A stretch of 27,745 nt of DNA from Octopus sinensis (Eukaryota), in assembly GCF_006345805.1 (NCBI RefSeq), contig NW_021827548.1, forward strand, positions 1 to 27,745, written 5' to 3'. Numbering within the stretch: the stretch's first letter is position 1; every line of letters starts with the position of its first letter. The translations under genes were made by a program, and so were the position numbers. The notes under the pieces are model-generated. The model searched no databases, had not been told where the DNA came from, and was given only the letters and a program-made list of their open reading frames with translations. Below are positions 6,916-7,394 of the stretch, piece after piece.

Positions 6916-7394
6916 CGTAAGGGGGATCAGCCATCTGAATGTGGCTAGGGACAGGGCGGGGTGGTAGGGGTGTTACTGATGCATTTAGCCCCAGGCGATC
7001 ATCGACGTCATCAAGATCGCAGTGTACCGAGGCCTGCGTGCTGAGCACCCTACTCTACGGCAAGCGAGAGCTGGACAACATACACCCGGCAGGAATGCGC
7101 CTCAGCGGCTTCCACATGCGTGTGTCTTCGACGGATCCTTGGCATCTCCTGGAAGGACCGGAGTACCAAACGGAGTCATCCTGGAACAGACTAATATGCC
7201 AAGCATGTATGCCTCTCGTGCGGAGACGACTGCGCTGGCTCGGACACGTCTGCCGCATGCAGGACGGTCGCATGCCTAAAGACATCCTGTACAGCGAAAC
7301 TCACCACGATGATCGCCTGGGCTAAATGCATCAGTAACACCACCCACACCCCGCCCTGTCCCTAGCCACATTCAGATGGCTGATCCCCCTTACG
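6916..7394. mobile_element. Fold-back / TIR-like element with 89- and 88-bp inverted arms enclosing a LINE fragment
   Basis: 6916-7004 is the reverse complement of 7307-7394 with 4 mismatches and 1 indel. TA at 6918-6919 and 7391-7392 is a possible TSD. Confidence 0.75.
7005..7306 (+). pseudogene. RTE-clade (BovB-like) LINE ORF2 fragment, region downstream of the RT core, frameshifted
   Basis: After correcting single-base indels it reads VIKIAVYRACVLSTLLYGSESWTTYTRQE.RLSGFHMRCLRRILGISWKDRVPNGVILEQTNMPSMYA..RRRLRWLGHVCRMQDGRMPKDILYSELT. LLYGSESW, CLRRILGI.W and RRLRWLGHV.RM are RTE signatures. Confidence 0.88.

What the first reader, a model, noticed from the sequence alone, without database searches (positions are those of the whole stretch)
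6916..7394. Long-TIR fold-back element that appears to have captured a LINE fragment
Seen: 89/88-bp near-perfect GC-rich inverted arms enclose exactly 302 bp, all of it RTE-clade ORF2 sequence. No other RTE sequence or tail flanks it. The outer context cgTA...TAcg fits insertion into a palindromic TA site. Inference: a non-autonomous DNA transposon (Pack-type) carrying a retroelement fragment, or a fold-back capture. Transcribed, it would form a long stem presenting LINE sequence as the loop, a possible source of silencing small RNAs.
Basis: partly seen in the sequence, partly recalled or inferred. Interest (0 to 1): 0.75.

Follow-up and report, generated by a model that had tools for sequence, protein, structure and literature searches.

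The report
Fold-back element with LINE-derived core
A 479-bp GC-rich block in a repeat-rich, probably octopod, genome has two near-identical 89-bp inverted arms around a decayed LINE reverse-transcriptase-gene fragment; it is most likely an ordinary small non-autonomous DNA transposon, but no second copy could be found to prove that.

Summary
The arms at 6916-7004 and 7307-7394 (89/88 nt, 94% complementary) enclose exactly 302 bp. Positions 7013-7305 are a plus-strand piece of a non-LTR retrotransposon ORF2, from the block just after the RT domain, and carry six frameshifts. No other piece of that LINE family lies in the window. The arms are not the neighbouring ORF2 sequence.

The inverted repeat ends where a sharp GC step occurs (about 58% against about 33%). 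The only possible target-site duplication is a 2-nt palindrome (TA), which cannot be told apart from an extension of the repeat. The arm occurs nowhere else in the window or in any collection I could reach, and the host genome is not in those collections. Family status ("Pack-type") is therefore untested.

The RTE clade assignment is not verified. The small-RNA idea is weak. The LINE sequence sits in the loop and not in the stem, and molluscs are reported to lack an endogenous siRNA pathway. ADAR editing is the likelier fate of such a hairpin RNA.

Best reading (about 0.45): a MITE-like TIR element whose core was filled in from a dead LINE copy. Rivals are a retrotransposition by-product, a local fold-back duplication, and an assembly artefact. 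Interest is low.

The parts
6916..7004 (+). Left arm of the inverted repeat (89 nt, 58% GC). The likely element terminus is AGGGGGATCAG starting at 6920.
   Evidence: the repeat finder and BLAST give 94% complementarity to 7307-7394. The GC step falls at 6900-6950. There are no internal sub-repeats.
7005..7306 (+). A 302-nt loop. Positions 7013-7305 are a decayed fragment of non-LTR retrotransposon ORF2, from the block just C-terminal of the RT domain (KIAVY...RLRWLGHVCRM...LYSE). It is truncated at both ends.
   Evidence: Relatives score E 1e-38. Six frameshifts are needed. The relatives carry RVT_1 immediately N-terminal of the matched block. In the relatives the ORF continues past LYGEL with GRPxLRYKD...ADRxxWR...CxxC, which is absent here.
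7307..7394 (+). Right arm of the inverted repeat (88 nt). The likely element terminus is ...CTGATCCCCCT, ending at 7390.
   Evidence: It is not the continuation of ORF2: every frame has stops or lacks homology. It shows no similarity to the regions around four related LINE copies.
6918..6919 (.). TA dinucleotide next to the left terminus. It is a candidate 2-bp target-site duplication; its partner is at 7391-7392.
   Evidence: A systematic scan found only the 2-nt palindromes TA, CG and TA as flanking direct repeats and nothing of 3 nt or longer. A 2-nt palindrome cannot be distinguished from an extension of the inverted repeat.
7391..7392 (.). TA dinucleotide next to the right terminus (partner of 6918-6919).
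6909..6917 (.). Weak outward extension of the palindrome into AT-rich flank: TCTGTATCG against TCTATAACG (the reverse complement of 7393-7401), 7 of 9 matching.
   Evidence: The empirical p is 0.03-0.08 for TA sites in this window, so it may be chance.
6948..6970 (+). G-quadruplex-type motif GGGACAGGGCGGGGTGGTAGGGG in the left arm, mirrored by a C-rich copy at 7343-7362. The patch where the two arms differ lies inside it.
   Evidence: Regular-expression scan.

Best explanation
This is a small non-autonomous (MITE-like) cut-and-paste DNA transposon copy about 471-479 bp long. Its roughly 85-89-bp terminal inverted repeats would be the binding sites for a transposase supplied in trans. The likeliest source is a Tc1/mariner-type enzyme, because TA is the only possible target duplication. 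The internal 302 bp is passenger DNA copied from an already dead genomic LINE ORF2 fragment. It was most likely filled in by template switching during gap repair after excision of a longer ancestor, which is the way internally deleted and 'filler'-bearing derivatives of DNA transposons usually arise. Shown here: the inverted repeat, the LINE origin and decay of the core, the coincidence of the repeat ends with a sharp compositional boundary, and the TA on both sides. Inferred: mobility, the TA being a duplication, the capture mechanism and the transposase superfamily. If read-through transcription occurs, the RNA would fold into an 89-bp stem made of arm sequence, with the LINE piece as a single-stranded loop. 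In a cephalopod that is a plausible ADAR hyper-editing substrate and not a source of anti-LINE siRNAs.
For: The arms are 89/88 nt and 94% complementary. GC is 58% in the arms and loop against 33-35% in the 500-bp flanks, and the step falls at both ends of the inverted repeat. A fold-back duplication of arbitrary extent would not be expected to stop there. TA lies on both sides and no longer direct repeat exists. The arms are not the ORF2 sequence that adjoins the fragment in relatives. The loop has six frameshifts in about 200 bp, while the arms differ by at most 1-3 indels over 178 nt. This suggests the LINE piece was already decayed when it was enclosed (Poisson p about 0.07, which is only suggestive). 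The same 27.7-kb window holds at least three other MITE-like inverted-repeat structures, one of them in two copies and one TA-flanked. The window shares SINE-like repeats with Argonauta hians at about 80% identity, so the host is probably an octopod. In Octopus vulgaris, 73 Tc1-Mariner, 65 MITE and 49 unclassified TIR families are reported as recently active (PMC13282606).
Against: Only one copy is known. The arm is absent from the rest of the window and from the viral collection. In the metagenome collection one 20-mer found nothing and the other gave a single 22-nt chance match. Arm-encoded peptides found nothing among 5.8 billion protein clusters. No ORF elsewhere shares this element's arm-encoded or frameshifted frames. 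These negatives are weak, because the host genome itself is not in those collections. The TA 'TSD' is a 2-nt palindrome and is automatically compatible with a simple palindrome. The termini (AGGGGG...) do not resemble any Tc1/mariner end I recall (memory only). They share nothing with the mariner-like copy in the window. No empty site is available.
Confidence: 0.45

Rival explanations
1. It is a retrotransposition by-product. The arms would be the 3' end (UTR) of the LINE itself or of a partner SINE, and both nicked target strands primed reverse transcription from an RNA 3' end (a twin-priming variant). This would leave two outward-facing 3' ends joined across an internally deleted LINE cDNA.
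For: The right arm has the same orientation as the ORF2 fragment and lies 3' of it. The ends of the inverted repeat coincide with the ends of the inserted block, as this model also predicts. LINEs and SINEs make up about a quarter of octopus genomes (PMC13282606).
Against: It needs an internal deletion of at least 60 codons plus part of the UTR exactly at the arm junction. There is no tail or microsatellite at the outer ends and no TSD longer than 2 nt. The arms show no similarity to the sequence downstream of four related LINE copies or to any SINE or LINE copy in the window. That test is weak, because those relatives are only 69-75% identical in the coding part.
Confidence: 0.15
2. It is a local fold-back (inverted) duplication made during double-strand-break repair. 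A 3' end at the right edge of a pre-existing 'arm + LINE fragment' block folded back on a CG/CGAT microhomology and copied the left arm. This is a one-off rearrangement and not a mobile element.
For: The inner ends of the arms are themselves near-palindromic (CGATCATCG / CGATGATCG), which gives a possible priming microhomology. The palindrome extends weakly, 7 of 9, into the flanks. The arm is single-copy in everything I searched.
Against: Copying would have to stop within a few bases of the left compositional boundary of the block, which would be a coincidence. The flank extension is no better than p 0.03-0.08. It also carries 2 mismatches in 9 nt, whereas the arms are identical outside one patch and one homopolymer run.
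Confidence: 0.12
3. It is an assembly or sequencing artefact: a chimeric fold-back read or a mis-joined hairpin fixed into the consensus.
For: All differences between the arms sit in a G-rich patch and a homopolymer run, which are typical error sites. The loop carries an unusual density of single-base indels.
Against: There are no gaps or Ns near it. Unique AT-rich sequence runs through on both sides. The arms are not identical. Elsewhere in the window decayed LINE ORFs stay open for up to 292 codons, so a general indel error rate of about 2% is excluded. A fold-back artefact would not end at TA/TA on a compositional boundary.
Confidence: 0.08

Closest known systems
MITEs and internally deleted non-autonomous Tc1/mariner elements with long TIRs
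   Same: Small size (under 800 bp), long terminal inverted repeats, no coding capacity, TA on both sides, an internal sequence unrelated to a transposase, and self-folding transcripts.
   Different: Copy number, the autonomous partner and a true TSD are unknown. The termini do not match the mariner-like copy in the window. The origin of the core, a LINE ORF2 fragment, can be identified here, which is usually not possible for MITEs.
Pack-TYPE transposons (Pack-MULE, Pack-CACTA; PMC6379663)
   Same: TIR ends with an internal segment acquired from elsewhere in the chromosomes.
   Different: Pack-TYPE elements are defined in plants. Their TIRs derive from a known autonomous family (MULE or CACTA), they have clear TSDs, they carry host gene fragments, and related copies carry different cargo. 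None of these features is shown here, and the cargo is a dead retroelement fragment.
Palindromic Harbinger-type repeats of Xenopus, and repeat-derived dsRNA loci that are hyper-edited by ADAR (PMC5625713)
   Same: A repeat that folds on itself into a long, nearly perfect dsRNA. Octopus bimaculoides is reported to have an exceptionally high fraction of such loci.
   Different: Transcription and editing of this locus were not tested. With GGGGG termini the flanks read TAA and TTA, which is not a proper 3-bp TWA duplication.
Drosophila Foldback (FB) elements
   Same: Long inverted arms around a variable middle segment.
   Different: FB arms are built from tandem sub-repeats and are hundreds to thousands of bp long, with 9-bp TSDs (from memory). 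Here the arms have no sub-repeats and there is no TSD of 3 nt or longer.
LINE 5' inversions produced by twin priming
   Same: LINE-derived sequence with an inverted segment created at insertion.
   Different: Twin priming inverts a different, upstream part of the LINE and does not usually create an 89-bp inverted duplication (from memory). Here the arms are not detectable LINE sequence.

Membership tests
MITE / non-autonomous TIR DNA transposon | Terminal inverted repeats at both ends of a short (under 800 bp) non-coding element | tested here: met
   The arms are 89/88 nt and 94% complementary, and the whole block is 479 bp. The only ORF is a frameshifted LINE remnant.
MITE / non-autonomous TIR DNA transposon | Target-site duplication flanking the TIRs | tested here: inconclusive
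   Only 2-nt palindromes (TA, CG, TA) flank it and nothing of 3 nt or longer. TA cannot be distinguished from an extension of the palindrome.
MITE / non-autonomous TIR DNA transposon | Several dispersed copies in the genome that share the ends | not testable with these tools
   The host genome is not in any collection. No copy was found in the window, the viral or metagenome DNA collections, or the protein collections.
Tc1/mariner superfamily (as the mobilising family) | TA duplication and TIR ends matching an autonomous Tc1/mariner element | tested here: inconclusive
   TA is present on both sides. There is no similarity to the mariner-like copy at 16762-17617. No other candidate partner was available.
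Pack-TYPE transposon | TIRs derived from a known autonomous family (MULE or CACTA), as described in PMC6379663 | tested here: not met
   Nothing in the window or in the collections I could reach matches the arms. The test is limited by the missing host genome.
Pack-TYPE transposon | Internal sequence captured from host chromosomal genes | tested here: not met
   The internal sequence is a decayed LINE ORF2 fragment and not host gene sequence. It is 'chromosomal DNA' only in the broad sense.
Pack-TYPE transposon | Related copies with the same ends and different cargo | not testable with these tools
   This needs the host genome.
RTE clade of non-LTR retrotransposons (for the cargo) | Placement in an RT-domain phylogeny, and an apurinic-type endonuclease + RT architecture | not testable with these tools
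   The fragment lies wholly downstream of the RT domain, and no reference set with clade labels was on hand. The RLRWLGHV.RM block is present, but from memory it is not specific to one clade. The relatives end in a CxxC...IGLxSH motif. This is consistent with the C2H2 finger reported for an octopus RTE (PMC9115989), but that is a hint and not a test.
Foldback (FB) elements | Arms composed of tandem sub-repeats | tested here: not met
   No direct-repeat families were found in 6500-7800.
hpRNA / endo-siRNA locus | A long hairpin whose stem matches the silenced target, with Dicer-sized small RNAs | tested here: not met
   The hairpin is predicted, but the LINE sequence is in the loop and not in the stem. 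Small RNAs could not be tested. Molluscs are reported to lack an endo-siRNA pathway (PMC12479628).

The most novel reading that the evidence does not exclude
The arms belong to a so far undescribed animal TIR family that repeatedly picks up fragments of other sequences, here a LINE piece, and moves them: a true Pack-type system in a cephalopod. Its self-folding transcripts would feed the unusually active ADAR editing machinery of octopods.
Probability: 0.1. Interest if true: 0.45.

Novelty: new member of a known kind. Interest (0 to 1): 0.2.

Why it matters
If the arms prove to be a multi-copy family with varied cargo, this would be an animal counterpart of the plant Pack-type elements. It would also show clearly how the 'unrelated' cores of MITEs arise, namely as filler copied from dead repeats. 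As it stands it is one more self-folding repeat in a genome already known to be unusually rich in them (PMC5625713). Its practical value is as an annotation caveat: repeat maskers would call a 300-bp LINE hit here and miss the TIR element that carries it.

Tried and rejected
1. Looked for the arm elsewhere. BLAST of the window against itself found no other copy. Two arm k-mers found nothing in viral contigs. One 20-mer found nothing in metagenome contigs. The other gave a single 22-nt chance match in an AT-rich 834-kb contig with no extended similarity.
2. Searched concatenated arm-frame peptides against 5.8 billion protein clusters and found none.
3. Searched the 128-aa ORF spanning arm and loop against 1.84 billion representatives. 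Only ordinary LINE relatives came back, at most 46-49% identical over the full-length matches; only short matches to the in-frame C-terminal stretch (residues about 93-121) scored higher. None covered the arm-encoded N-terminus.
4. Tried to locate the host genome by exact look-up of eleven window ORFs. None is on record. A third protein search with another LINE ORF gave only three unnamed hits.
5. Scanned Rfam. Nothing reached gathering score. A sub-threshold MIR918 match (28.7 bits against 268) only reflects the long hairpin.
6. Tested whether the arm is the continuation of ORF2. It is not.
7. Tested whether the arm resembles the flanks of four related LINE copies. It does not rise above shuffles.
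8. Scanned for hAT (8 bp), PIF/Harbinger (TWA), Polinton (6 bp) and Merlin (8-9 bp) style duplications at all plausible TIR starts. None was found.
9. Considered two independent inverted insertions of a short repeat on either side of an old LINE fragment. I rejected this because no host DNA remains between the arms and the fragment.
10. Searched the supplements of the octopus LINE paper for arm k-mers and found nothing.
11. Looked for TIRs of the mariner-like copy. The result was swamped by microsatellites.

Full report
**What is there.** Reading 6700-7600 and running the repeat finder and BLAST confirm the inverted repeat. The arms are 6916-7004 (89 nt) and 7307-7394 (88 nt). They are 94% complementary (E 4e-34) and enclose exactly 302 nt (7005-7306). 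The arms are identical except in one G/T-rich patch (GGTAGGGG against GTGGGTGG, about 6962-6972) and one C4/C3 run. That patch lies inside a G-quadruplex-type motif (6948-6970), which is mirrored at 7343-7362. The arms contain no internal direct repeats. Folded as RNA, 6900-7410 forms one long hairpin of -285 kcal/mol, against -173 +/- 7 for shuffles (z = -15.6).

**The loop.** Three-frame translation and a frameshift-aware alignment to relatives show that 7013-7298/7305 encodes KIAVY / ACVLSTLLYG / SESWTTYTRQE / RLSGFHMR / CLRRILGISWKDR / VPNGVILEQTNMPSMYA / LVRRRLRWLGHVCRMQDGRMPKDILYSE. This reading needs six frameshifts, at about 7028, 7062, 7096, 7122, 7162 and 7214, with a possible seventh at 7299. 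It has no in-frame stop. A protein search gave 149 relatives with E down to 1e-38 and 65-72% identity. Most were unnamed fragments, but some were named proteins of Argonauta hians, Babylonia, Nucella, Saccostrea, Branchiostoma and a fish. Longer relatives carry Pfam RVT_1 immediately N-terminal of the matched block. The loop is therefore the segment just downstream of the RT domain of a non-LTR retrotransposon ORF2.

In the relatives the ORF continues past LYGEL with ...GRPxLRYKDVCKRD...ADRxxWR...CxxC...IGLxSH. Here it runs straight into the arm and hits a stop (THHDDRLG*). Nucleotide matches to four loci holding related copies (69-75% identity) all begin at 7009-7022 and end at 7297-7299. They stay inside the loop even though the LINE continues on both sides in those loci. 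No other piece of this LINE family occurs in the 27.7-kb window. The only other RT there (11706-12563, minus strand) is a distant family at 26-38% identity.

I could not test the 'RTE clade' label. The fragment lacks the RT domain and no clade-labelled reference set was on hand. The C-terminal Cys/His motif of the relatives is consistent with the C2H2 finger reported for an octopus RTE element (PMC9115989), but that is only a hint.

**The host.** The window is AT-rich and full of microsatellites, SINE-like repeats and LINE and mariner-like fragments. Its roughly 415-bp SINE-like family and other repeats match an Argonauta hians contig at about 78-85% identity. The host is therefore probably an octopod cephalopod. 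Eleven window ORFs are not in the 15-billion-protein collection, so the host genome itself was not available to any tool.

**Boundaries and target site.** GC is 58% in the arms and the loop, against 33-35% in the 500-bp flanks, and the step falls at both ends of the inverted repeat. A scan over all plausible TIR starts and duplication lengths of 2-10 nt found only the 2-nt palindromes TA, CG and TA. This leaves either a 2-bp TA duplication, as for Tc1/mariner, or none. Because TA is its own reverse complement, a single copy cannot tell a duplication from an extension of the palindrome. The palindrome extends weakly into the flanks (TCTGTATCG against TCTATAACG, 7 of 9). In this window that degree of symmetry is seen at 8% of all TA sites and at 3% of random flank pairings. 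The 'palindromic target' adds little.

**Copy number.** The arm has no second copy in the window. Two arm k-mers found nothing in the viral collection. Of two 20-mers scanned against metagenome contigs, one found nothing. The other hit one AT-rich 834-kb contig with a bare 22-nt match and no extension, which is chance. Peptides from every open frame of the arm found nothing among 5.8 billion protein clusters. The 128-aa ORF that starts in the left arm and reads through the frameshifted loop found only ordinary LINE relatives among 1.84 billion representatives. The full-length matches were at most 46-49% identical, and only short matches to the in-frame C-terminal stretch (residues about 93-121) scored higher. 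None covered the arm-encoded residues 1-13 or shared the out-of-frame stretches. No second copy of the arm or of the chimera is visible anywhere I could look. This is weak evidence, because the host genome is absent from those collections.

**What it most likely is.** I weigh four origins.

1. *A MITE-like non-autonomous TIR transposon whose core is filler copied from a dead LINE copy.* This explains why the ends of the inverted repeat coincide with the compositional boundary, why TA sits on both sides, and why the block is small and non-coding. The window itself contains other MITE-like fold-backs:
   - a roughly 180-bp element with 59-nt TIRs at 9756-9938, with a second copy at 10364-10613;
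   - a TA-flanked pair of 66-nt arms at 25746-26020;
   - a pair of 131-nt arms at 7678-8770.

   Octopus vulgaris is reported to have 73 Tc1-Mariner, 65 MITE and 49 unclassified TIR families with recent activity (PMC13282606). The loop carries six frameshifts in about 200 bp, whereas the arms differ by 1-3 indels over 178 nt (Poisson p about 0.07). This suggests, but does not prove, that the LINE piece was already decayed when it was enclosed. That would mean DNA-level capture from a dead copy and not from an active LINE RNA.
2. *A retrotransposition by-product in which the arms are a LINE or SINE 3' end primed from both target strands.* This also predicts that the repeat ends are the insert ends. 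It needs an exact internal deletion, has no tail and no TSD, and the arms match nothing around four related LINE copies. That last test is weak at this divergence.
3. *A local fold-back duplication primed on the CG/CGAT microhomology at the inner arm ends.* This is possible, but copying would have had to stop within a few bases of the block's compositional edge.
4. *An assembly artefact.* The arm differences sit at error-prone sites. Against it, there are no gaps, unique sequence runs through on both sides, the arms are not identical, and other decayed ORFs in the window stay open for up to 292 codons. That excludes a general indel error rate of 2%.

My confidences are 0.45, 0.15, 0.12 and 0.08, with the remainder unassigned.

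**Function.** Nothing suggests a host function. The duplex is arm sequence and the LINE piece is the single-stranded loop, so any Dicer products would not match the LINE. A survey of 32 molluscs, including O. bimaculoides, found no dedicated endo-siRNA pathway (PMC12479628). Octopus has both an exceptionally high fraction of loci able to form long near-perfect dsRNA and exceptionally high ADAR hyper-editing. Self-folding palindromic transposons are documented ADAR targets in frog (PMC5625713). If this locus is transcribed, editing of the stem is the likelier outcome. This is inference, and transcription was not tested.

**Comparison with known kinds.** It works like a MITE or an internally substituted non-autonomous TIR element. 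Membership in 'Pack-TYPE' (PMC6379663) is not supported. The arms are not tied to a known autonomous family, there is no clear TSD, the cargo is a transposon remnant and not host gene sequence, and no sister copies with other cargo are known. It is not a Drosophila-type Foldback element, because its arms have no sub-repeats. I file it as a probable new member of a known kind and of low interest. The open, modestly interesting possibility is a cargo-shuffling TIR family in cephalopods (probability about 0.1).

Noticed in passing
window 7678-7807 and 8643-8770: A second long inverted repeat lies only 300 bp downstream: 131-nt arms, 91% identical, about 835 bp apart. It encloses a tRNA-like SINE copy (8085-8340) and microsatellites. 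Its arms are unrelated to those of the finding.
   Followed up: partly
window 9756-9938 and 10364-10613: A MITE-like fold-back of about 180 bp with roughly 59-nt TIRs (TATAGTATATAAGTAAAAAGGGCAGGCAACAGG...). A second copy 95% identical lies about 550 bp away in the same orientation, together with about 120 bp of shared downstream sequence.
   Followed up: partly
window 25746-25811 and 25955-26020: A pair of 66-nt inverted arms (86% identical) with TA-flanked CAGGGAGAG-type termini around about 140 bp. It looks like a Tc1/mariner-type MITE.
   Followed up: no
window 363-778, 3606-4008, 4059-4545, 5774-6252, 21648-22029: Five copies of a roughly 415-bp SINE-like repeat, 75-90% identical to each other. 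They match an Argonauta hians contig (L003) at about 75-85% identity, which points to an octopod host. ARAGORN finds no tRNA-like head in them.
   Followed up: partly
window 8085-8340, 15672-15861, 26531-27137: A second SINE family with a tRNA-like segment (…GTCGACCTCGGCGGAATTTGAACCCAGAACGTAA…). At 26531-27137 it is present as three head-to-tail units of about 185 bp.
   Followed up: no
window 11109-13100 (- strand): Another LINE ORF2, with RVT_1 at E 8e-28, is broken into three ORFs of 292, 167 and 145 aa. It belongs to a different family from the loop fragment, and only three unnamed relatives were found for its N-terminal part in 5.8 billion clusters.
   Followed up: partly
window 16762-17617 (- strand): Two overlapping ORFs look like a decayed mariner/Tc1-type transposase, with a weak paired-box-like DNA-binding domain (PF00292, E 9e-5). 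No TIRs could be recognised because of the neighbouring microsatellites.
   Followed up: partly
window 7028-7214 versus 7215-7298: All six clear frameshifts of the LINE fragment fall in its first 200 bp. Most are single extra bases in short homopolymer or dinucleotide runs. The last 85 bp (RRRLRWLGHVCRMQDGRMPKDILYSE) is in frame. I found no explanation for the uneven distribution.
   Followed up: no
window 1816-2877, 2881-3447, 4954-5504: Long compound microsatellites of the (TATACA)n, (TCTA)n, (GA)n and (TGTA)n kinds generate many spurious ORFs and hundreds of spurious inverted-repeat calls.
   Followed up: no
window 23518-24144 (- strand): A 208-aa ORF resembles the C-terminal part of yet another non-LTR ORF2 (…LEFASSVWNPY…). 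It has no Pfam match.
   Followed up: no
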